Source: Trichosphaerium sp. ATCC 40318
Taxonomy: Eukaryota > Protista > Tubulinea
DNA length: 64,000 bases
Assembly (NCBI GenBank): GCA_038496445.1
Contig: JALMLS010000320.1
Location: forward strand, 124,001 to 188,000
Direction of reading: 5' to 3'
A model generated the notes under the pieces. That model was given only the letters and a program-made list of their open reading frames with translations. It searched no databases and was not told the DNA's origin. Position 1 is the first letter of the stretch, and every line of letters begins with the position of its first letter. Position numbers and translations under genes: made by a program. Shown one piece after another: positions 3,111 to 38,852 of this stretch.

Positions 3111-4388
3111 TTAGGATCTTGTTATCGTATGAGCACTAGTCAATTCCTTTACAGTTTCATCTGTCATAGCTCCTTTTGTTAAGCAGATAGTGTGCACACC
3201 TACAAGCGCTTTTAATGCTGCAACTGTTATGCTTGTATATGTCAAATCGATTTTATGTACACCTGCCAACGCCTTGATACCCTCATCTGTAATTGTGTCA
3301 CAATAATACAAGTTGATGGTGTGAACTCCTGCCAGTGCCTTCACACCCTCATCTGTAATTAAGCAATAACCCAAGTTGATGGTGTGAACTCCTGCCAGCG
3401 CCTTCACACCCTCATCTGTAACATCTGTACGTGTCAAATCAATGTTATGTACACCTGCCAACGCCTTGATACCCTCATCTGTTATTAAGCCACAATAACG
3501 CAAGTTGATGGTGTGAACTCCTGCCAGCGCCTTCACACCCACATCTGTAACATTTGTACATGTTAAATCAATGTTATGTACACCTGCCAACGCCTTCATA
3601 CCCTCATCTGTAATTGAGTCACAATAACACAAGTTGATGGTGTGAACTCCTGCCAGTGCCTTTAAACCCTCATCTGTAACATTCATGTTTGTTAAATCAA
3701 TCTTATGTACACCTGCCAATGCCTTGATACCCTCATCTGTAATTGTGGTACAATAATACAAGTTGATGGTGTGAACTCCTGCCAGCGCCTTCACACCCTC
3801 ATCTGTAACATCTGTACGTGTCAAATCAATGTTATGTACACCTGCCAACGCCTTGATACCCTCATCTGTTATTAAGCCACAATAACGCAAGTTGATGGTG
3901 TGAACTCCTGCCAACGCCTTTAAACCCTCATCTGTTATTGAGCCGCAATAACGCAACTTGATAGTGTGAACTCCTGCCAGCGCCTTCAAACCCTCATCTG
4001 TAACACCTGTATATGTCAAATCAATATCATGTACACCCGCCAACGCCTTGATACCCTCAGCTGTAATTTTGTAGCACTTTTTCAATTTGATTGATTGTAC
4101 TCCCCTCAATAGCTTGATAGTATAGTCTGTTACATGTTCATGATCACGAAAGTGAATAGTTGTATTCTGGAGTAATGGACTACCAGAAAGGATTTTCACA
4201 TCATTTTCTGTAATGTTGATACAACCATACCCAACGTATTTTTGGACAACATCGTACAAAAAGTGGCATGTATGGGCTGTATTGAGTGCGTGAATCCCTT
4301 GTTTGAGTATATGAACTATTATTTCAATTGGCAGCGCTATTAGGTAGGATACCGGCTGAAGTGTATTTTCAATGTCTTTTTTTTCCAT
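3111..4388 (-). CDS. Intronless F-box + LRR protein with near-identical 21/22-aa repeats
   Basis: N-terminal LIALPIEIIVHIL...TCHFLY (F-box-like), followed by about 14 ALAGVHxIxLxx(x)xxTDEGxK repeats. Confidence 0.9.
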   Translation of the reverse strand: MEKKDIENTLQPVSYLIALPIEIIVHILKQGIHALNTAHTCHFLYDVVQKYVGYGCINITENDVKILSGSPLLQNTTIHFRDHEHVTDYTIKLLRGVQSIKLKKCYKITAEGIKALAGVHDIDLTYTGVTDEGLKALAGVHTIKLRYCGSITDEGLKALAGVHTINLRYCGLITDEGIKALAGVHNIDLTRTDVTDEGVKALAGVHTINLYYCTTITDEGIKALAGVHKIDLTNMNVTDEGLKALAGVHTINLCYCDSITDEGMKALAGVHNIDLTCTNVTDVGVKALAGVHTINLRYCGLITDEGIKALAGVHNIDLTRTDVTDEGVKALAGVHTINLGYCLITDEGVKALAGVHTINLYYCDTITDEGIKALAGVHKIDLTYTSITVAALKALVGVHTICLTKGAMTDETVKELTSAHTITRS

Positions 4389-8358: not shown

Positions 8359-8902
8359 AACGAGCATCGGTTAAGGTAACTCGACTTTTGTTGTTGAAAT
8401 CGCTCCTCAGTTGAGAGTGTTTTTTGTGCATTACAAGGCTTATTTTACCTATCATTTTTTATCAACTTGCACGTGACTTGAGTCAATGTCGCCACATAAA
8501 CAATGAAATTTATTGGATAGCTATTGTTTGTTGCGTAACACCACCTTAACCTCCCCAACTTGATTAGTTGTCGACGAGGCTACATTGATTTTATTTATTC
8601 CATGGTTTTCATTTCTGTGATAGCGAGGAAGACAATATTGTCCTTCAAAAAACAACATTACGCAAGCACAGAGTACAGTCGCAATTCTCTTGCCAAAGGC
8701 TTCGGATTTTGATTCTGGGAACTTGATCAAAGTTGAACTAAATCATCAAGACACAGAGTTACAGGTAACATTCGTGCACAATAAGTCAAGGTTAAGTCAT
8801 TTGAACGTTAAACATCGCGCCAAAAAAAGTCTACAAAACTTAGAAACGTCCGAAGCGCTACATACGTACAATATCACATACGATAAACCCTGGACGAAAA
8901 AC

Positions 8903-10633
8903 ATGAGTACTATTGGAGTGCCGGTTAACCGAATTAAAAACCTACCAGATGACATGCTAGCGCTAGTGTTATTCATTTTCAGCGATCCAGTAATCGTTCC
9001 AATATTAATGAAGCGAACTTGCCGTCTATTCCGTGATTTTGTTCAACGTCTCCCTGACGCATTCTACATCTCTCTATGTAAGCGTCTATCGCTTCATTAC
9101 ATGTTTCCTCTCTACAAAAAACAAACAATACGCGATTTCTGGTTTGACTACATCCCAGTATACTTGAAGTACACAAAATATCATCCAGAGAACTTTGCAA
9201 TAGACTGCGAAGCCTTTAAAAAGGTTGTAACTAAAATCGGCGATAGAATGAAAACTGACGTCGTTTGGCCCACAGAAACCTTACTATTACTCCAGACAAC
9301 TGCTGAAGCATACTTAACAAAGAGATTTTCTTGGTTTTCCGAAACAGCAGAACGTGTCAAAGATCACGTGGATGTCAACAAGTTGACACTTCAAAAGACA
9401 AAAATGATACGTGAAGATGTACCTTATGGTCCTCACCGGATATTTAACTGGTTGAGCGATGAGAGATTTGCTAGTGTGTTTGGCGTTGAGTATAATGAAG
9501 AGATTGCAAAAGAGGATGAGGATTACGTCTGTAGCGACCAAGAGGAGCTCGAAAACGAACCTTTTGTTGTATCTCCATATGGTGATTTTTATGACGAAGC
9601 AGAAGATGGTAAATGGAGACTTAATATGGATAAGTTGGATAATATTACAGGACTTGTTCACCATAATCCAAGGCTTCTATCAAACAAAAGAATTAAAGCA
9701 CTAGAAAAGCTTCACGGGAAGAGTTTTTACAATAACACAGATGCGTTAGGTATGACGCCAATGCATGTTGTAGCAGAGCAAGCAGAACTTACTGACTATA
9801 TTGATCCATACCATGTTAGGGCGTATAGTCTACTTGAGTCACAGCATAATAACAATCAACAGGATATGCTCGGTAAAACAATACCTATGTATATGGGTGA
9901 GAAACTAATAGACGCAACTTTATGGCATGGTAAAGAGCTTCAGGATGTATATGATATTAATATAAGAGATAATAGAGGATGGTCTTTTTTACATCATAAT
10001 CCTGTCTCTAAGGAAATAGCTACTGGTCTACATCTATTCGATATTGATCTATTCTGGATGTGGTTTGTTGGAGGAAAGTATGATTTACTACTTGATGAGG
10101 ATGTTATTCCTTGTTGGGGAAAACTCGATATTTTTAAACAAGATGTTGATGGACGTACTATCGCTTTCAAGCTCTCTGAAGTTGATAAAGAGTTTCATAC
10201 AAGTGGGTACGGTGATTTTACACAACTCATTTGTATGCATGAATGTTTTGTACCTAATCATCAAGATATCCTTGGTGATACTGCACTTATTGTTGCTTGT
10301 AAGGTTTATAATCCTCACATGATTTTTACGCTTATTTTCTTTGGTGCTGATCCTTTGATAAAGAATAACCAAGGAATGACAGCTCTTGATTATATTAAAG
10401 ATTGGCAACAATGTGATCCTTCTCAGATAGAAGATGCTATGTGTGATGGTGATGAAGAGATTGATAATGAGATTATTGCGGCACTGAAGACATGTATTGT
10501 TCCAAAATCTGCTGTTATAAGAATGGCAGCAAGCGATTGTCTTGCTCTTTGTGGAGAACCTTGGAGACATGAAGCTATGAAATACATGGAACTTGATATA
10601 CTGAAAGAAAAGTTTCAGAACATTGATTCTTGA
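8903..10633 (+). CDS. Intronless F-box + histone H3-like fold + ankyrin-repeat protein
   Basis: First ATG at 8903. F-box IKNLPDDMLALVLF...TCRLFRDFV. H3-like segment at 9200-9418. Ankyrin motifs DALGMTPMHVVA, DNRGWSFLH and DILGDTALIVAC...GADPLIKNNQGMTALDY. Confidence 0.85.
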   Translation: MSTIGVPVNRIKNLPDDMLALVLFIFSDPVIVPILMKRTCRLFRDFVQRLPDAFYISLCKRLSLHYMFPLYKKQTIRDFWFDYIPVYLKYTKYHPENFAIDCEAFKKVVTKIGDRMKTDVVWPTETLLLLQTTAEAYLTKRFSWFSETAERVKDHVDVNKLTLQKTKMIREDVPYGPHRIFNWLSDERFASVFGVEYNEEIAKEDEDYVCSDQEELENEPFVVSPYGDFYDEAEDGKWRLNMDKLDNITGLVHHNPRLLSNKRIKALEKLHGKSFYNNTDALGMTPMHVVAEQAELTDYIDPYHVRAYSLLESQHNNNQQDMLGKTIPMYMGEKLIDATLWHGKELQDVYDINIRDNRGWSFLHHNPVSKEIATGLHLFDIDLFWMWFVGGKYDLLLDEDVIPCWGKLDIFKQDVDGRTIAFKLSEVDKEFHTSGYGDFTQLICMHECFVPNHQDILGDTALIVACKVYNPHMIFTLIFFGADPLIKNNQGMTALDYIKDWQQCDPSQIEDAMCDGDEEIDNEIIAALKTCIVPKSAVIRMAASDCLALCGEPWRHEAMKYMELDILKEKFQNIDS

Positions 10634-11261
10634 GGACAGTTGTATATATGACACAGAACGCAGTAGCTGTCTGGTCACCAGCATAAAAATAAATACAAAA
10701 ATATTACACCAAGTACTATTCAAGAGTCTCATATTTACTTATTGCCACAGTGAAGACGCCAAAGGGCCACACACTTATTTTTCTGAGAGTGTAGTTGTCT
10801 GCCATCTTTGGCTTTGTCATCTCTTTCAAAGTGTGAACAAAAGTTCTATTGGGTACAATACAGTATAGTGCTTTTCAACTTAGCTACTACTTGACAGTAG
10901 TCTCGTGTTCTTTTTGTTTTACAATAGTACGCTACTCATTGCGTATACACTTTGACCAGCTGTGTTCATGAGCTTCATTATCAAAAATAATGTATAGTCT
11001 GCGCGACAGAAGGGTAACTTTAGTAGGGTCCTTCATGTAGAGCAATTTACACATGTGCAACAACAGTGCTTGCAATCATAAATACAAAAAGCGTGCCTAA
11101 AGTTAGCACTTTTGCCTAGTTGGAGAATACCATGTATGTGCGAACTGTTCCATTCATGTTTATCCATAAACAAAGCCCTGAAAACCTGTAACAGTTTTTT
11201 TTAGACCCTTTGCGTTAAAGCAAAGAACAATTAGTGTACCACAAGTAGTTGCAAAAAAATA

Positions 11262-13029: not shown

Positions 13030-15039
13030 ATGACCACGCCTAAACCAGCTATGAGAGTCCCAGAAGAGGAGGAAGACATTTTTACTGACCGCGATCTGAT
13101 AAACGACAGATACGAAGTGGTGAAGCGTTTGGGCAAAGGAGGCTATGGTAATACTTTTAGCTACATGTAGCGTTTTTATTAGGCCTTTTCTTGCCTGTAC
13201 AGCGATCTTTTTAATTGGTTGTAATTGTTTGTGAAGGTGAAATTTACCAAGCACGAGATGTTACAAATGGCCAACTTGTTGCGGTCAAAGTGGAACGCGT
13301 AACCAAACCCGGCAATTTGTTGGAGGAAGAAAAAATTCTGCGGTCCCTGAACGGTAAGTACCCCTTTATATATCAATGGGGAGCGCGAATTCGTAAAAAA
13401 CAAAACTAAAACTAAAACGCGTTCGTTTGTACTTTTTTTTCGTTGTTTGCATTTGGACTTTGGGCTCATGTGTTGGTTTAGAACGCGGAGCACACTACGT
13501 TCCTCGATTGATCAGTTCAGGCCGCCACAACGACATGGTGAACTTTATCGTCATGGAGCTTCTTGGCGAAAATTTATCCGTATTACGGTTCGTTTGAGCG
13601 TATATGGATGCCCTCAGTGTGACTTGTTGTTTAGGAGACGACAACCAACACATAAATTCTCCAAACTCACCACAATGGCTCTTGGTTTGCAAATGCTGCG
13701 TGCAATAAAAGAAGTACACGATTTGGGTTATATTCACAGAGATATTAAGCCTGTACGATGATTCAAAGACGATTTTTTGGGTTTTTTTTGTTTTTTCGGT
13801 TTTCCTCACCTGCTTTTTAACTATTTGTCCTCAATCACTCATATTTTCTACAGGGCAATTTTGTTATGGGTTCTGCTGCAACTGATACAGAGCGTACTGT
13901 AATGTTAATCGATTTTGGTCTTTCAAGACGTCATTTCCGCCCAGAGGGTGGTGTACGACCTGTACGTTTGTTTTTATATTATATTTTTAGAAGTATGATG
14001 GTGCAAAACTTTATTTTTGGGCGTTTTTGGCGTTCAGAAAGTAAAAGCTTACTTTGATGTTTAGAAGCGAAAATGTGCCCGTTGGGTGGGCAGTCGCCGT
14101 TATATGTCGATAAATACTCACCAACGTAAAGACCAAGGGCGTCGCGATGACTTATGGTCTCTTCTTTACGTTTTTATCGAATTTTACACCGCAACTCTTC
14201 CTTGGGCGCATTTACGTGGTATTCAGAACCTGGTACGTTGTAGTTTGATTTTTTTCTACTGGATAGTAGGCCTTCTAGAAGGTTTTGTTTTTTTTGTTCG
14301 AAAAATAGTGTTGACGCCATTAAAGGATAATGTCCGGGATATGAAAATTCAGTATAATAATGAAAAACTTGTAAAGAACTGTCCTGAAGAGTTCTTAAAG
14401 TTTATGAATCACATTAAAGAGCTCCGGTATGAAGACCGTCCTGACTATGATTATTTGATGAATCTTCTTTCGAAACTGTTCGATGATGATGGTGGTACGT
14501 TGTTTGTAGCTGTGCAATCAGTTTTTATTGTATTGGATTTATGTTGGTTCTCTTTATACTCATGCTTTGTTGTTTAGGTGACGAATCATTTAAATTTGAC
14601 TGGGAACAACCAGAGCCTAGAAAGGACGAGGATAGCATGGATTATGATCCTGGTAGACGGTACGCTGATAGGTTTTTTTTTATTTTAATTTAATTTGCGT
14701 ATTTCACTGTGCTAAATACTTTTCTAGACCTGAGGTACGCACTGGAGGGAAGGACTCTGGTAGTATTGAAGAAAAGGATAAGCGTAGAACGCTTCATCCT
14801 TCAGGCAATGAACGTGTACTCACAAACAAATTGGTAAGGGACTTTTTTTTCTGGCAGTTGAGAAACTTTTATTTTAACACGTGTACCACCTGACACGTGT
14901 AATTTTTGAACAAAAAAGAAACCTCGCGTATACTCTTTTCATGTTCTTATGATTTGTTCTTTAGCCCGAAGACAGCGATCCTAGAAATCGTAAAAAGAAG
15001 AAGAGGAAAGGCTGGAAGAAAAAATGTACCATAATGTAA
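13030..15039 (+). CDS. Casein kinase 1 group (TTBK-like) Ser/Thr kinase, multi-exon, C-terminal CaaX
   Basis: LGKGGYG, VAVKVE, IHRDIKP, LIDFGLS, GSRRYMS, QGRRDDLWSL and EDRPDYDYL. The protein ends KKKKRKGWKKKCTIM*. Confidence 0.92.
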
Positions 15040-15426: not shown

Positions 15427-16641
15427 ATGCAGAGTAGTGTAGCTGATCCTGATGCTAAACGGGTGTTAATGTACGCTTTTTGAAGTATAAACGTTCAAAA
15501 ACGTATAACAATACCTGATTTGATTTTGCGCGCTCTTAGAACGCCTAATAAACCATTTTGATAGTGATTTGTACGATTTTGTGTTAATTTCGTTTCTAGC
15601 AACGCACTACACGTTAAAACGCTCACATCGTTTCGCGATCTCCCAAAAGAGATCATTGGCGTCATTTTAACCTATTTAAAGTACTCAAGGTTCGAAGCAG
15701 CACAAACATGTCAATTATGGGCCAAAATCATACATAATAGCGTAGGGTACATACGTGTACGTACAAAAACAGATGAAGACGTTTTAAGAATTTCAATGTT
15801 TGACGGAATCCTCCGAAACACAAAGATCTTTTGTCATCCTAATATAACAGATAACGCCGTTAAATCAATAAGAAAAGCATGCAATATAACATTTGAAGAT
15901 TGCTTAGAAATAACAGATGATAGCATTGGATTACTTGAAAACATAAAAACGATTCATTTATGGAACTGTACACAAGTCACAGATGAAGGGATTAAGTCAT
16001 TAAAAAAAGTTCATACATTCAGTTGTTTCCAGAATAAAAATATAACAAACAAAGGACTTGAGATACTATCAGGTAGTGCTTATAAAGTAAGTATAAGTAG
16101 ATGTAATTTATTCTCCGATGAAGGTGTAAAACATCTTGCTGGTGTACATACGGTTATTCTTTATGGAGCTAATATAACAGATGATGGTGTTAAGTACCTA
16201 TCTGGTTCATATAAGGTTATGTTGGATGGTTGTTATCATATCACTGATGTTGGCGTTGAAGCTCTTTCTGGTGTTCATACTATAAGTATAAACTGGTGTT
16301 TTAATGTTACTGATAAAGGTGTAAAGTATCTTGCTGGAGCACATTATATTGGTATTGCTGAGTGCAGTCTTGTTACTGATGTTGGTGTTAAATCTTTGGC
16401 TGGTGTACATACTATTGATTTGAGCGGGTGTAAGAATGTTACAGATGAAGGTATTATGGCTTTAAAAGGTGTTCATCGTATCTCACTTACACATTGTAAT
16501 CTTGTAACTGATAGAGGTATAAGTTCACTTGTTGGTGTTCATACTATAAAGTTATATGGTACATCTGTTACTGATGAAGGTATAAAACAGTTAAAAGGTG
16601 TACATAAAGTGATAAGGAAAAAACCAAAGCATATTCAGTAA
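15427..16641 (+). CDS. F-box + LRR protein (one intron, 15471-15599)
   Basis: Exon 1 MQSSVADPDAKRVL joins in frame to FRDLPKEIIGVIL...QTCQLW (F-box), followed by GVHTI-type LRRs. Confidence 0.88.
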
Positions 16642-17448: not shown

Positions 17449-18724
17449 CTAGAACTCAAACTCCATCCATGTCTCATTTTCAAATAGCCAAGTCTTGGGT
17501 GCTTTTATGTAGTGTACATCCACTTTGGCATCTCTTAACACATTAACAGCTTCTTCTGTAACATTGACGCAATTCTCAACGTAAATTGAATGTACACCTT
17601 TTAAGTCTTTTATGCCCTTGTCTGTTATTTGTTCACAACCTTTAAGAGTAATACTATGACAACCTCCCAGCGCTTTGATTCCTTCATCAGTTACTGGTGT
17701 ACAAGATAGATCGATGGTATGAACGCCTTCAAGTGCTTTTAATCCTTCACTTGTTATGCTTTTACATCCGCGAATATTAATGCTGTGAACACCTTCTAGA
17801 GCTTTGATGCCTTCATCACTTACTGAAGTATTACATAAAGTAATGGTGTGTACTCCTCCTAGCGCCTTGATGCCTTCATCGCTTACTGGTGTACAAGATA
17901 GATCAATGGTATGTACACCAGCAATCTGTTGTAGCGCTTCAACTGTCACTTGACAATTGCAAAGGCTAATTGAATGAACGCCTTTTAGCGCCTTGATGCC
18001 TTCTCCTGTTACTGGAGTATTTGATAGATCTATAGTATGAACGCCAGCAAGTTTGCTTATGCTGTCATCTGTTATTTGCTTACATCCTCCAAGTTTAATA
18101 GTATGAACACCACCAAGTTTGCTTATGCTTTCATCTGTTATTTGCCTACATCCTCCAAGTTTAATAGTATGAACACCAGTCAGTGCTTCGACGCCTTCAT
18201 CTGATATCAAGGGGGAACAACTAAGATCAATAGTATGAACGCCAGCAAGTGCTTTTAAGCTTTCATCAGTTGCCCACGTTGCACGAAGGTCAATTGTATG
18301 AACACCAGATAACAACTTGATTCCGTCATCTGAAACATTTGTACAACCATGGAGGTCAATAGAATGAATACCAGGAGTAATTGATTCTAGATCATAGTTG
18401 GTACATTTATTTGTCATTCTAAAGTTTTTACATCCTGCCAATAACGAGTAAATACTGAAGCGCTTAATTTTACATAGTGAAATCTGACTATTGTTCATCA
18501 CGCCCTTATACTCTCTTATCTTTAGAATATCTTGTATATTTGAAGGGAACACGTGTTTGTACCCAATAATATCATGAATAATATCAGCAAAAACGGTACA
18601 AGATTGAGCAGCAGAATATCTTGAACGTGACTCTGTGTAGTCTATAATATTTGAAAGAACCTCATTTGGAAGATCTAGAATACTCTTTTCTTTTTCAGGG
18701 ACCTCCGCAGGACCACTACTTCAT
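17449..18724 (-). CDS. Intronless F-box + LRR protein (start codon appears 1 nt out of frame)
   Basis: The open frame upstream of the tracked ORF reads SILDLPNEVLSNII...QSCTVFADII (F-box), then about 13 GVHTIDL LRRs. The ATG at 18724 reads ATG AAG TAG unless one A is removed. Confidence 0.8.
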
Positions 18725-36961: not shown

Positions 36962-37621
36962 TTAATACCACCACTTGGAGGTACCTGATTTATTTGTTAT
37001 TCTATAACCTCTTTCGCAACTGATATCAGTCGCCGGATTTAACGTCAAGCACCTCAATGCACTGTCTTGACTGACACATCCTTTTGGCATACCATACCGC
37101 CAATTGAGCCCATCTCCTACGCCAATAACAACAACCCTTATCCCGCGTGCATGAACGACTGGAGCAAGAGAGCAAACTTCTTGAGGTTCCTGGATACCGT
37201 ACGGTTGTCCATCTGTTACAAATGAAAGAACATGGTCTGATCCTTGTGGAGAGTTTTGTAGAGTAAACTCAAGTGCACCTTTAACATCAAACTCCATGCC
37301 GCAACCTACATATCGAGTGTTGGCGAAGTGAGCAAGGATGGCTGGTTTTGTAAGTTCGTTGTATTCTTCATTTTGAAAGCTTCCTTCTATGTTTATCGTG
37401 TCACAAATGATGTTTAGAGAAATAAGAGTTCCGTATTCTGCTTCTCGTTCGATTTTTTGAGCAATACTGTTCATGAGTCTTTGCCAGTTTGATTCTGTTG
37501 TTGTGGGTGACGTCAAGCTTACAAGGATCGTCAATGCTCGTTGTGGTTGAGGATTTTGAGCTTTTGATTGATATATTGCTACTAATACTATTGAGAGAAG
37601 TAGTAGAGAGGTCGCGGACAT
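36962..37621 (-). CDS. Secreted VWA-like domain protein (paralog 3)
   Basis: Probable start MSATSLLLLSIVLVAIYQSKAQ at 37621, then FVTDGQP and GIRVVVIGVGDG. Confidence 0.75.
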   Translation of the reverse strand: MSATSLLLLSIVLVAIYQSKAQNPQPQRALTILVSLTSPTTTESNWQRLMNSIAQKIEREAEYGTLISLNIICDTINIEGSFQNEEYNELTKPAILAHFANTRYVGCGMEFDVKGALEFTLQNSPQGSDHVLSFVTDGQPYGIQEPQEVCSLAPVVHARGIRVVVIGVGDGLNWRYGMPKGCVSQDSALRCLTLNPATDISCERGYRITNKSGTSKWWY

Positions 37622-38852
37622 GTTGTGGTTTGTGGGTTTGCGGAAACAGTGTCTATTAATGGTTCGGTTGATGGACTTGTATTCATTTAATTCTTTTCTT
37701 GGCTTTTTGTATTCTTCTCGTATGTTTAGGATTCGGGTCTTCACAATAGGATTGTACCTGTCCCAGAGGTATATTATTACATCAAGAAATAAATAACGTG
37801 CGAGTTTTTTCAAACTACAAACTGTAAAAAAACTGAGTTTTCAAAAACCGAACGTTTTCTATTCATAACGCCGACATGAATATCTACGAAGGTAAAATTT
37901 ACTACCCATTTAACATTAAACTGATTTGGTTCAGGTGTTTATCATGTGAGCAAGGCATACAAAATTACTTCGAGATGAGTCTTTGGACAAGCACAAAAAA
38001 CAAAGACAGCCGCTTGTTGATTAAACTCTGCCTTTATTAAATGTGTGAGCCTTTTTTCAAGATGCCTAAGCTCACCGAATAGTCAACTGTTCTTAATATG
38101 TATCATTTTGCCTTAATCGCTGTGATAAAAAGGTTACTGTGATCAGTTTGCACCTAAGATTACAAGTTTCAAAAAAAAAAACGTGGCAAGGCCGTCTGCT
38201 TTAGTTTGTATCGAAAGATAGAATGTTAGTATTACGCTGACATAAACATGTTACAATACCAACAATATACAATCTTGACATTGCATAGACTCACGTTGAT
38301 TACCAAAATCAATAGAAAAACCATGAGCCATTTGTTTACTTACTTATTTCGGAGTATACTTAAATGGTGATTAACTTTACAAACTTGAAAATGATCGAGA
38401 GTGTTAACAAGTTGCTTTAAAACAAGAGTGGGTTCGTTTAACTTCATAACTAAAAAACATACTGTGCTTGAAGCTTGAAGGAGCACATTGGAATGGTTCG
38501 TGTTCACGTAGACCTTCCCATACACGTTCACGAGAAGTAGGTAGAGGTAAAGGCTCATTAATAAATTCTTGCAAGGGCAACAGTAAAAACGGGTAAGTAT
38601 TTATACAAGATCTACACGTGAACTGGCGATAAGGTTAGTCACCTTGAAAAAGCTAAGTAGCACCCCATTCCAGGTAAATACATGATACATTCTTAACAAA
38701 ACAATACTTTATACTTGTTTTTGTGGGACACACAAATAAACAAAAAAAAAGTTCTTCGTTTTTCCCACATTTTCTTCTGTTTTGGGGAATAATTCACAAA
38801 ACCAGTAAAAACGTACGCGCTCCATAATTAAAAAATATACCTACCAAAAGGC

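What the first reader, a model, noticed from the sequence alone, without database searches (positions are those of the whole stretch)
8903..10633. F-box / histone H3-fold / ankyrin fusion: a possible histone-mimic E3 adaptor
9200-9418 encodes IDCEAFKKVVTKIGDRMKTDVVWPTETLLLLQTTAEAYLTKRFSWFSETAERVKDHVDVNKLTLQKTKMIRED. By eye this aligns with H3 [72 protein letters not shown] with one gap and about 20/72 identities (KTD, LQ, EAYL, IR). Several DNA-contacting and H3-H3 bundle residues (R63, R83, H113, D123) are lost. The fold sits between an F-box and an acidic linker plus ankyrins in an intronless gene. I know of no described protein with this architecture. Inference: an integrated decoy that binds H4, histone chaperones or viral histones and delivers them to SCF.
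Basis: partly seen in the sequence, partly recalled or inferred. Interest (0 to 1): 0.87.

Follow-up and report, generated by a model that had tools for sequence, protein, structure and literature searches.

The report
F-box–ankyrin gene with H3-like segment
An amoeba gene with no detectable relatives in public databases encodes a probable ubiquitin-ligase adaptor (F-box plus ankyrin repeats) whose middle part looks like half of the histone H3 core, but the resemblance is only borderline significant and its function is untested.

Summary
The ORF is real: 8903-10633 (+), 576 aa, uninterrupted, the longest in the window. The quoted peptide is at 9200-9418 and aligns to real H3 as described: 20/74 identities, one gap, with R63, R83, H113 and D123 replaced. 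Ankyrin repeats pass Pfam cut-offs. The F-box is sub-threshold in Pfam (13.3 bits) but is the top language-model match (0.95).

The H3 resemblance is clear pairwise (BLASTP E 1e-5; hhalign P 1.8e-6, probability 89.7%). It is marginal at database scale (Pfam Histone 15 bits against a 26.4 cut-off, E 0.03; PDB E 0.06-0.11), only slightly better than spurious hits of neighbouring segments (E about 0.33). Strong similarity covers only alpha1-L1-first half of alpha2 (aa 105-142). Language-model neighbours of aa 92-180 are nearly all histones (0.88).

No relatives exist in 1.84 billion proteins, so both AlphaFold2 runs had no alignment and failed (pLDDT 35-36). The fold is therefore unverified, and no RNA evidence was obtained.

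My reading is a lineage-restricted SCF-type receptor with a probably H3-derived partner-binding module that has lost its net basic charge (about 55-60%). The decoy function is speculation.

Those copies could not be fetched and would settle the question.

The parts
8903..10633 (+). Complete uninterrupted coding frame, 576 aa plus stop (TGA 10631-10633)
   Evidence: Longest ORF of the window. Two short public contigs at 99% identity cover 10073-10272 and 10414-10634.
8942..9052 (+). F-box-like motif, aa 14-50 (an LPDD..L start and a TCRLFRDFV end)
   Evidence: Pfam F-box is the only hit for aa 8-58, at 13.3 bits and E 0.085, below the 20.5 cut-off. The language-model top hit for aa 1-75 is an F-box cluster at 0.95, and every named family among its hits is F-box. 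No F-box hit by PDB phmmer.
9200..9418 (+). Histone H3-like segment, aa 100-172, collinear with H3 residues 62-133
   Evidence: 20/74 identities with one gap, and 18 of 25 large hydrophobic H3 positions stay hydrophobic, while only 5 of 13 basic positions stay K/R. pI 6.9 (aa 96-172).
9215..9328 (+). Best-supported core of the resemblance, aa 105-142, matching H3 alpha1, loop L1 (KTD kept) and the first half of alpha2 (LQ..AEAYL..F)
   Evidence: BLASTP 13/38 identities, E 1e-5 pairwise. hhalign 44 columns, 34% identity, probability 89.7%. The Pfam Histone stretch falls here.
9419..9484 (+). Pro/Gly break (VPYGP) and a short spacer, aa 173-194. The H3-like part ends where H3 itself ends.
   Evidence: Sequence. 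No H4-like or other hit in aa 173-266.
9485..9622 (+). Acidic linker, aa 195-240
   Evidence: 17 D+E against 3 K+R, pI 4.05.
9686..10462 (+). Degenerate ankyrin-repeat region, aa about 262-520. Recognisable repeats lie near aa 262-291, 359, and 442-520.
   Evidence: Pfam Ank_4 at aa 262-291 and Ank_2/Ank_5/Ank at aa 442-497, above cut-offs when the C-terminal part is scanned alone. PDB ankyrin proteins match at E 1e-4. G-x-T/S-x-L motifs at aa 283, 359, 458, 491.
10463..10630 (+). C-terminal tail, aa 521-576, no recognisable domain
   Evidence: No Pfam or PDB hit.

Best explanation
This is a lineage-restricted member of the F-box/ankyrin class of cullin-RING (SCF-type) substrate receptors. The region between its F-box and its ankyrin repeats is most likely a degenerate copy of the histone H3 core fold. 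Shown: the uninterrupted 576-aa frame, ankyrin repeats above Pfam cut-offs, an acidic linker, and a collinear H3 resemblance. That resemblance keeps the hydrophobic core positions of alpha1-L1-alpha2, loses most DNA-contacting basic residues and the H3-H3' bundle residues, and ends where H3 ends. Inferred: the N-terminal F-box binds Skp1 and so couples the protein to a cullin. The H3-like module, now near-neutral, no longer binds DNA or forms tetramers. It serves instead as a protein-protein module, most plausibly pairing with an H4-type histone fold (free H4 or an H4-like domain). The acidic linker and the ankyrin repeats would add contacts to basic partners. The net effect would be ubiquitylation of a histone-type or histone-associated partner, or control of the receptor by such a partner.
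For: ORF and anatomy. Ankyrin. F-box: it is the sole Pfam hit of aa 8-58, in the expected register, and the language-model top hit at 0.95. H3-likeness: histone H3 is the best hit in PDB and Histone the best hit in Pfam, both in the same register. Pairwise BLASTP gives E 1e-5. hhalign against 24 real H3 sequences gives probability 89.7% and P 1.8e-6. 0 of 5000 shuffles reach the alignment score. 18 of 25 large hydrophobic positions are kept (1 of 20000 shuffles in that fixed register), while 8 of 13 basic positions are lost. Language-model neighbours of aa 92-180 are nearly all PF00125 clusters, with a top score of 0.88 and 175 of 256 shared features. In the low-confidence AlphaFold2 model, helices 102-116 and 124-152 coincide with H3 alpha1 and alpha2 when mapped through the alignment (H3 helix limits are from the published nucleosome structures). 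An H3 HMM singles out this ORF among all six-frame pieces of the window. Functional analogy: the ankyrin/SOCS-box receptor ASB9-CUL5 ubiquitylates free H3 and H4 through electrostatic binding (PMC12154916).
Against: Every database-scale statistic is marginal. Pfam Histone scores 12.7-15 bits against a cut-off of 26.4, and an obviously spurious ApoC-I hit sits beside it at E 0.04-0.05. PDB E-values are 0.06-0.11, while control segments of the same protein get spurious top hits at E 0.33-0.35 with nearly the same bit scores. Pfam, PDB, hhalign and the language model all read the same 40-70 residues, so they are not independent. The second half of alpha2, L2 and alpha3 are only weakly similar. 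No structure was obtained (pLDDT 36 and 35; Foldseek was uninformative). No homologue was found anywhere, so no conservation test was possible. The F-box is below Pfam's cut-off. There is no expression evidence. All functional steps are inference.
Confidence: 0.55

Rival explanations
1. This is an ordinary orphan F-box/ankyrin receptor. The segment aa 100-172 is just the helical linker that many F-box proteins carry between the F-box and the substrate-binding domain, and its likeness to H3 is a chance or convergent amphipathic-helix resemblance.
For: Database-scale E-values (0.03-0.15) are close to those of clearly spurious hits for the same protein. The significant similarity spans only about 38-46 residues. 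The Pfam curated threshold is not met. No fold was obtained.
Against: H3 is the top hit in two libraries, and the language-model neighbours are almost exclusively histones with a high shared-feature count. The match is collinear over the whole fold, its end coincides with the H3 C-terminus followed by a Pro/Gly break, and core positions are kept while surface basic ones are lost. The window's next best H3-profile score is 8.5 bits lower.
Confidence: 0.3
2. The H3-like piece is an integrated decoy in a surveillance protein. It imitates H3 so that enzymes or effectors aimed at H3 (from giant viruses, intracellular bacteria or the cell's own chromatin machinery) are caught and ubiquitylated. It does not pair with H4.
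For: The L1 loop KTD (the H3 K79-T80-D81 position) and the LQ..AEAYL stretch are the best kept parts. Unchecked scan notes report other histone pieces fused to F-box, NACHT and vWA proteins in this genome.
Against: Nothing here tests it. The scan notes are unverified leads. No pathogen-related context was seen around the gene. The H3 tail, the usual target of histone-directed enzymes, is absent.
Confidence: 0.1
3. The frame is an unexpressed or decaying gene copy of a multi-copy family, with no present function.
For: No RNA evidence was obtained. The gene is intronless although scan notes call this genome intron-rich, and it belongs to a multi-copy family.
Against: A 576-codon frame without a stop in 38% GC DNA is not expected for a decayed copy. 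No flanking repeats suggest a mobile element. Of three differences in a 99%-identical public sample, two are synonymous, though three sites are too few to carry weight.
Confidence: 0.05

Closest known systems
F-box proteins with ankyrin repeats as the substrate-binding domain (a class noted for protist and other F-box proteins, PMC9485057; also bacterial mimics such as Legionella AnkB, PMC2790608)
   Same: An N-terminal F-box-like motif is followed by a C-terminal ankyrin-repeat domain, and the presumed role is an SCF substrate receptor.
   Different: This protein has a 73-residue H3-like segment and an acidic linker between the two domains. Its F-box is below Pfam's cut-off. No sequence relative exists in 1.84 billion proteins.
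Histone H3 core fold (Pfam PF00125)
   Same: The two are collinear over H3 62-133. KTD in L1, LQ..AEAYL..F in alpha2 and 18 of 25 large hydrophobic positions are kept.
   Different: There is no H3 tail and no alphaN. 8 of 13 basic positions are lost, the pI is 6.9, and the H3-H3' bundle residues (H113, D123, L126) are replaced. The second half of the fold is barely similar, and the score is below Pfam's cut-off. This is not a histone.
Histone-fold domains inside non-histone proteins (SOS N-terminal domain, TAFs, CENP-T/W/S/X, NF-Y; from general knowledge, not tested here)
   Same: A histone fold is reused as a protein-protein module without nucleosome formation.
   Different: Those are old, widespread families with their own profiles, and none is joined to an F-box. 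Here the nearest relative is H3 itself, which suggests a more recent capture.
ASB9-CUL5 ligase (ankyrin + SOCS box), which ubiquitylates free H3 and H4 (PMC12154916)
   Same: Ankyrin repeats are joined to a cullin-adaptor box, and electrostatic binding of free histones offers a plausible working analogy.
   Different: ASB9 uses a SOCS box and CUL5 rather than an F-box and CUL1, and it has no histone-like segment. The two are not homologous beyond the ankyrin repeats.
F-box / histone-fold / BTB gene cluster and F-box gene with an H3-tail start in the same genome (scan notes s1-378504, s1-378521; unchecked here)
   Same: An F-box is joined to a histone-derived piece in the same organism.
   Different: The C-terminal domain differs (BTB or unknown rather than ankyrin). 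I could not compare sequences, so any relationship is unknown.

Membership tests
F-box proteins (SCF substrate receptors) | An F-box motif of about 40-50 aa recognised by the family profile | tested here: inconclusive
   Pfam PF00646 is the sole hit of aa 8-58 but scores 13.3 bits against a 20.5 cut-off, E 0.085. It gives no hit when longer pieces are scanned. The language-model top hit is an F-box cluster at 0.95. The LP...L and C-R-x-F-R-x-F-V positions are present in the sequence.
F-box proteins (SCF substrate receptors) | Binding to Skp1 | not testable with these tools
   Needs AlphaFold-Multimer or a pull-down.
F-box proteins (SCF substrate receptors) | A C-terminal protein-interaction domain | tested here: met
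   Ankyrin repeats are above Pfam cut-offs.
Histone fold (Pfam PF00125 / histone clan) | A significant profile match | tested here: not met
   12.7-15 bits, E 0.03-0.15, against a cut-off of 26.4. hhalign against H3 gives probability 89.7% over 44 columns, which is suggestive but not decisive.
Histone fold (Pfam PF00125 / histone clan) | The alpha1-L1-alpha2-L2-alpha3 three-dimensional fold | tested here: inconclusive
   AlphaFold2 without an alignment gave pLDDT 36 and 35. Helices 102-116 and 124-152 fit alpha1 and alpha2, but alpha3 is not formed in the model. Foldseek found nothing with E <= 0.001.
Histone fold (Pfam PF00125 / histone clan) | A handshake dimer with a partner histone fold | not testable with these tools
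   No multimer prediction is available. No second fold was found in aa 173-266.
Bona fide histone H3 / CenH3 | A basic N-terminal tail, DNA-contact arginines and H3-H3' four-helix-bundle residues | tested here: not met
   There is no tail. R63D, R72T, R83V, R116H, K122L, H113R, D123T and L126K are substituted, and the pI is 6.9.
Ankyrin-repeat proteins | Repeats recognised by the Pfam ankyrin profiles above the gathering score | tested here: met
   Ank_2 28.0 against 27.3 and Ank_4 26.2 against 22.7. PDB ankyrin proteins match at E 1e-4.

The most novel reading that the evidence does not exclude
This amoeba carries a family of SCF adaptors with a captured, de-basified histone H3 core as a built-in bait. 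The bait would seize orphan H4, histone chaperones, or H3-directed enzymes and effectors (for instance of giant viruses or intracellular bacteria) and hand them to the ubiquitin system. It could belong to a wider genome-wide habit of fusing histone pieces to adaptor and sensor proteins.
Probability: 0.2. Interest if true: 0.85.

Novelty: new variant of a known kind. Interest (0 to 1): 0.5.

Why it matters
F-box proteins define what SCF ligases destroy, and their substrate-binding parts are normally generic repeats. A receptor that carries a piece of a core histone would be a new way of choosing targets, by imitating one half of an obligate dimer. It would also bear on how cells or their parasites handle free histones. 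If the many other histone-fragment fusions noted in this genome are real, this gene is one entry point to a larger, undescribed system. If the resemblance is chance, it is simply an orphan F-box/ankyrin gene.

Tried and rejected
- **Relatives.** None were found. The whole protein against 5.8 billion clusters gave nothing. aa 1-200 by exhaustive HMMER against 1.84 billion representatives gave 0 hits at E <= 0.001. JGI metagenome contigs and IMG/VR gave nothing, and there are no paralogues in the window.
- **The scan's own index.** It gave no sequences and no look-alikes.
- **Structure.** AlphaFold2 without an alignment failed for aa 1-200 and for the full length (pLDDT 36 and 35).
- **Folding on an alignment of H3 sequences.** I chose not to do this. 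It would impose the answer, and no control job was available.
- **A more diverse H3 profile.** The search returned only near-identical canonical H3, so the profile adds little over one sequence.
- **A second, H4-like fold after the H3-like part.** Not found.
- **Expression.** The only public runs holding the stretch are contig-level, cover 10073-10634 only, and are not on record as RNA.
- **Mobile-element or viral context.** There are no flanking repeats, and no informative neighbours beyond LRR genes.
- **Other RNA genes.** No tRNA or Rfam family in the window.

Full report
**What is there**

The window looks eukaryotic: about 37% GC, sparse long ORFs, and RNI-type LRR genes. Earlier notes of this scan call the organism an amoeba or marine protist.

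The finding's coordinates hold an uninterrupted frame. The ORF runs 8690-10633 on the + strand, and its first ATG is at 8903, giving 576 aa. It is the longest ORF of the window. At this base composition a frame of that length has a chance probability of about 5e-20 (my arithmetic).

No repeats flank the gene, and no tRNA or Rfam family lies in the window.

**The observation**

Bases 9200-9418 encode aa 100-172, exactly the quoted peptide.

- **Core against surface.** 18 of H3's 25 large hydrophobic positions remain hydrophobic, while only 5 of its 13 Lys/Arg positions stay basic. The segment is near-neutral (pI 6.9).
- **Boundary.** The H3-like stretch stops where H3 itself ends and is followed by VPYGP.
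- **Linker.** An acidic linker follows at aa 195-240 (17 D+E, 3 K+R, pI 4.05).
- **Ankyrin repeats.** These are real. Ank_2 scores 28.0 bits and Ank_4 26.2 bits, both above their cut-offs, at aa 442-497 and 262-291. PDB ankyrin proteins match at E 1e-4.
- **F-box.** Support is weaker. Pfam F-box is the only hit of aa 8-58 but scores 13.3 bits against a cut-off of 20.5. The language-model search of aa 1-75 has an F-box cluster on top at 0.95, a level that shuffled proteins reach about once in 100.

**Is the H3 likeness more than chance?**

Taken as a single comparison, yes.

- Smith-Waterman scores 64 against 22.2 +/- 3.9 for shuffles, and none of 5000 shuffles reaches it.
- BLASTP gives 30 bits and E 1e-5.
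- hhalign against 24 real H3 sequences gives P 1.8e-6 and probability 89.7%.
- An H3 HMM gives this ORF 15.7 bits, against 7.2 for the next best of 1200 six-frame pieces of the window.

Taken as a database search, it is marginal.

- Pfam Histone scores 12.7-15 bits, E 0.03-0.15, against a cut-off of 26.4. A plainly spurious ApoC-I hit sits beside it at E 0.04-0.05.
- PDB phmmer gives E 0.06-0.11, and all 60 listed hits are H3.
- Two control segments of the same protein collect spurious top hits at E 0.33-0.35 with almost the same bit scores.

The convincing part is short. It covers aa 105-142, that is alpha1, loop L1 with KTD kept, and the first half of alpha2 with LQ..AEAYL..F. The rest of alpha2, L2 and alpha3 is only collinear.

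The language-model neighbours of aa 92-180 are almost all PF00125 clusters. The top score is 0.88 with 175 of 256 shared features, a count typical of true family members. This method reads the same residues as the others, so it is not independent evidence.

**Structure**

No relative exists in the searchable collections, so both AlphaFold2 runs had no alignment and failed (mean pLDDT 36.2 and 35.1).

Alpha3 is not formed, and the model is too poor to count. Foldseek on it found nothing with E <= 0.001; its H3 rows have rmsd of about 8-13 A.

I did not fold the segment on an H3 alignment, because that would impose the result.

**Expression**

The only public runs that hold any of the stretch are contig-level and are not on record as RNA. 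They cover 10073-10272 and 10414-10634 at 99% identity. They show three differences: two synonymous and one P553H. This shows the DNA exists in another sample, nothing more.

**Reading**

Most likely (about 55%) this is a lineage-restricted SCF-type receptor of the F-box/ankyrin class, whose inter-domain region descends from the H3 core.

The pattern of what is kept and what is lost fits a module that still packs like the H4-facing half of H3 but no longer binds DNA or forms the H3-H3' bundle. The hydrophobic core of alpha1-L1-alpha2 is kept. The DNA-contact arginines, the bundle residues and the net charge are lost.

With the acidic linker and the ankyrins, the module could hold a basic histone-type partner for ubiquitylation. 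ASB9-CUL5, an ankyrin/SOCS-box receptor that ubiquitylates free H3 and H4 by electrostatic binding, is a working analogy, not a relative (PMC12154916).

The main rival (about 30%) is that the segment is an ordinary post-F-box helical linker with a chance likeness. The decoy-for-effectors idea (about 10%) and a silent gene copy (about 5%) remain open.

**Comparison and novelty**

F-box proteins with ankyrin repeats are a known class (PMC9485057). Histone folds reused in non-histone proteins are known from general knowledge (SOS, TAFs, CENP-T).

I found no paper describing an F-box joined to a histone fold.

The scan has met this before. Other notes report an F-box/histone-fold/BTB cluster and an F-box gene with an H3-tail start. 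I could not fetch or test any of those, so they are leads only. They are also the obvious way to settle the matter.

Read laying was given 3501 letters.

Noticed in passing
window 3111-4388 (-), 15796-16641 (+), 17449-18552 (-): Three long ORFs are RNI-type leucine-rich-repeat proteins (Pfam LRR_6, E 1e-49, 6e-17 and 8e-22). This is a local cluster of one repeat family around the gene.
   Followed up: no
window 36962-37813 (-): A 283-aa ORF has a weak von Willebrand A hit (E 7e-4, below the cut-off). Scan notes mention VIT-vWA proteins carrying histone pieces elsewhere in this genome. A possible link was not examined.
   Followed up: no
window 10073-10272 and 10414-10634: Contigs of two public runs (one sample) match at 99% with three differences: 10183 T>C and 10219 T>C are synonymous, and 10560 C>A gives P553H. 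In both runs the second contig stops at 10634, one base past the stop codon, and runs into Illumina adapter sequence.
   Followed up: partly
window 14086-14577 (+): A 163-aa ORF has a weak match to the C-terminal lobe of the protein kinase domain (E 0.011). It may be one exon of a spliced kinase gene.
   Followed up: no
window 10088-10732 (-): A 214-aa antisense ORF overlaps the 3' end of the gene. Its translation is low in complexity and it is probably a by-product of the AT-rich antisense frame.
   Followed up: no
window 1-64000: No tRNA gene and no Rfam family at gathering score in 64 kb.
   Followed up: yes
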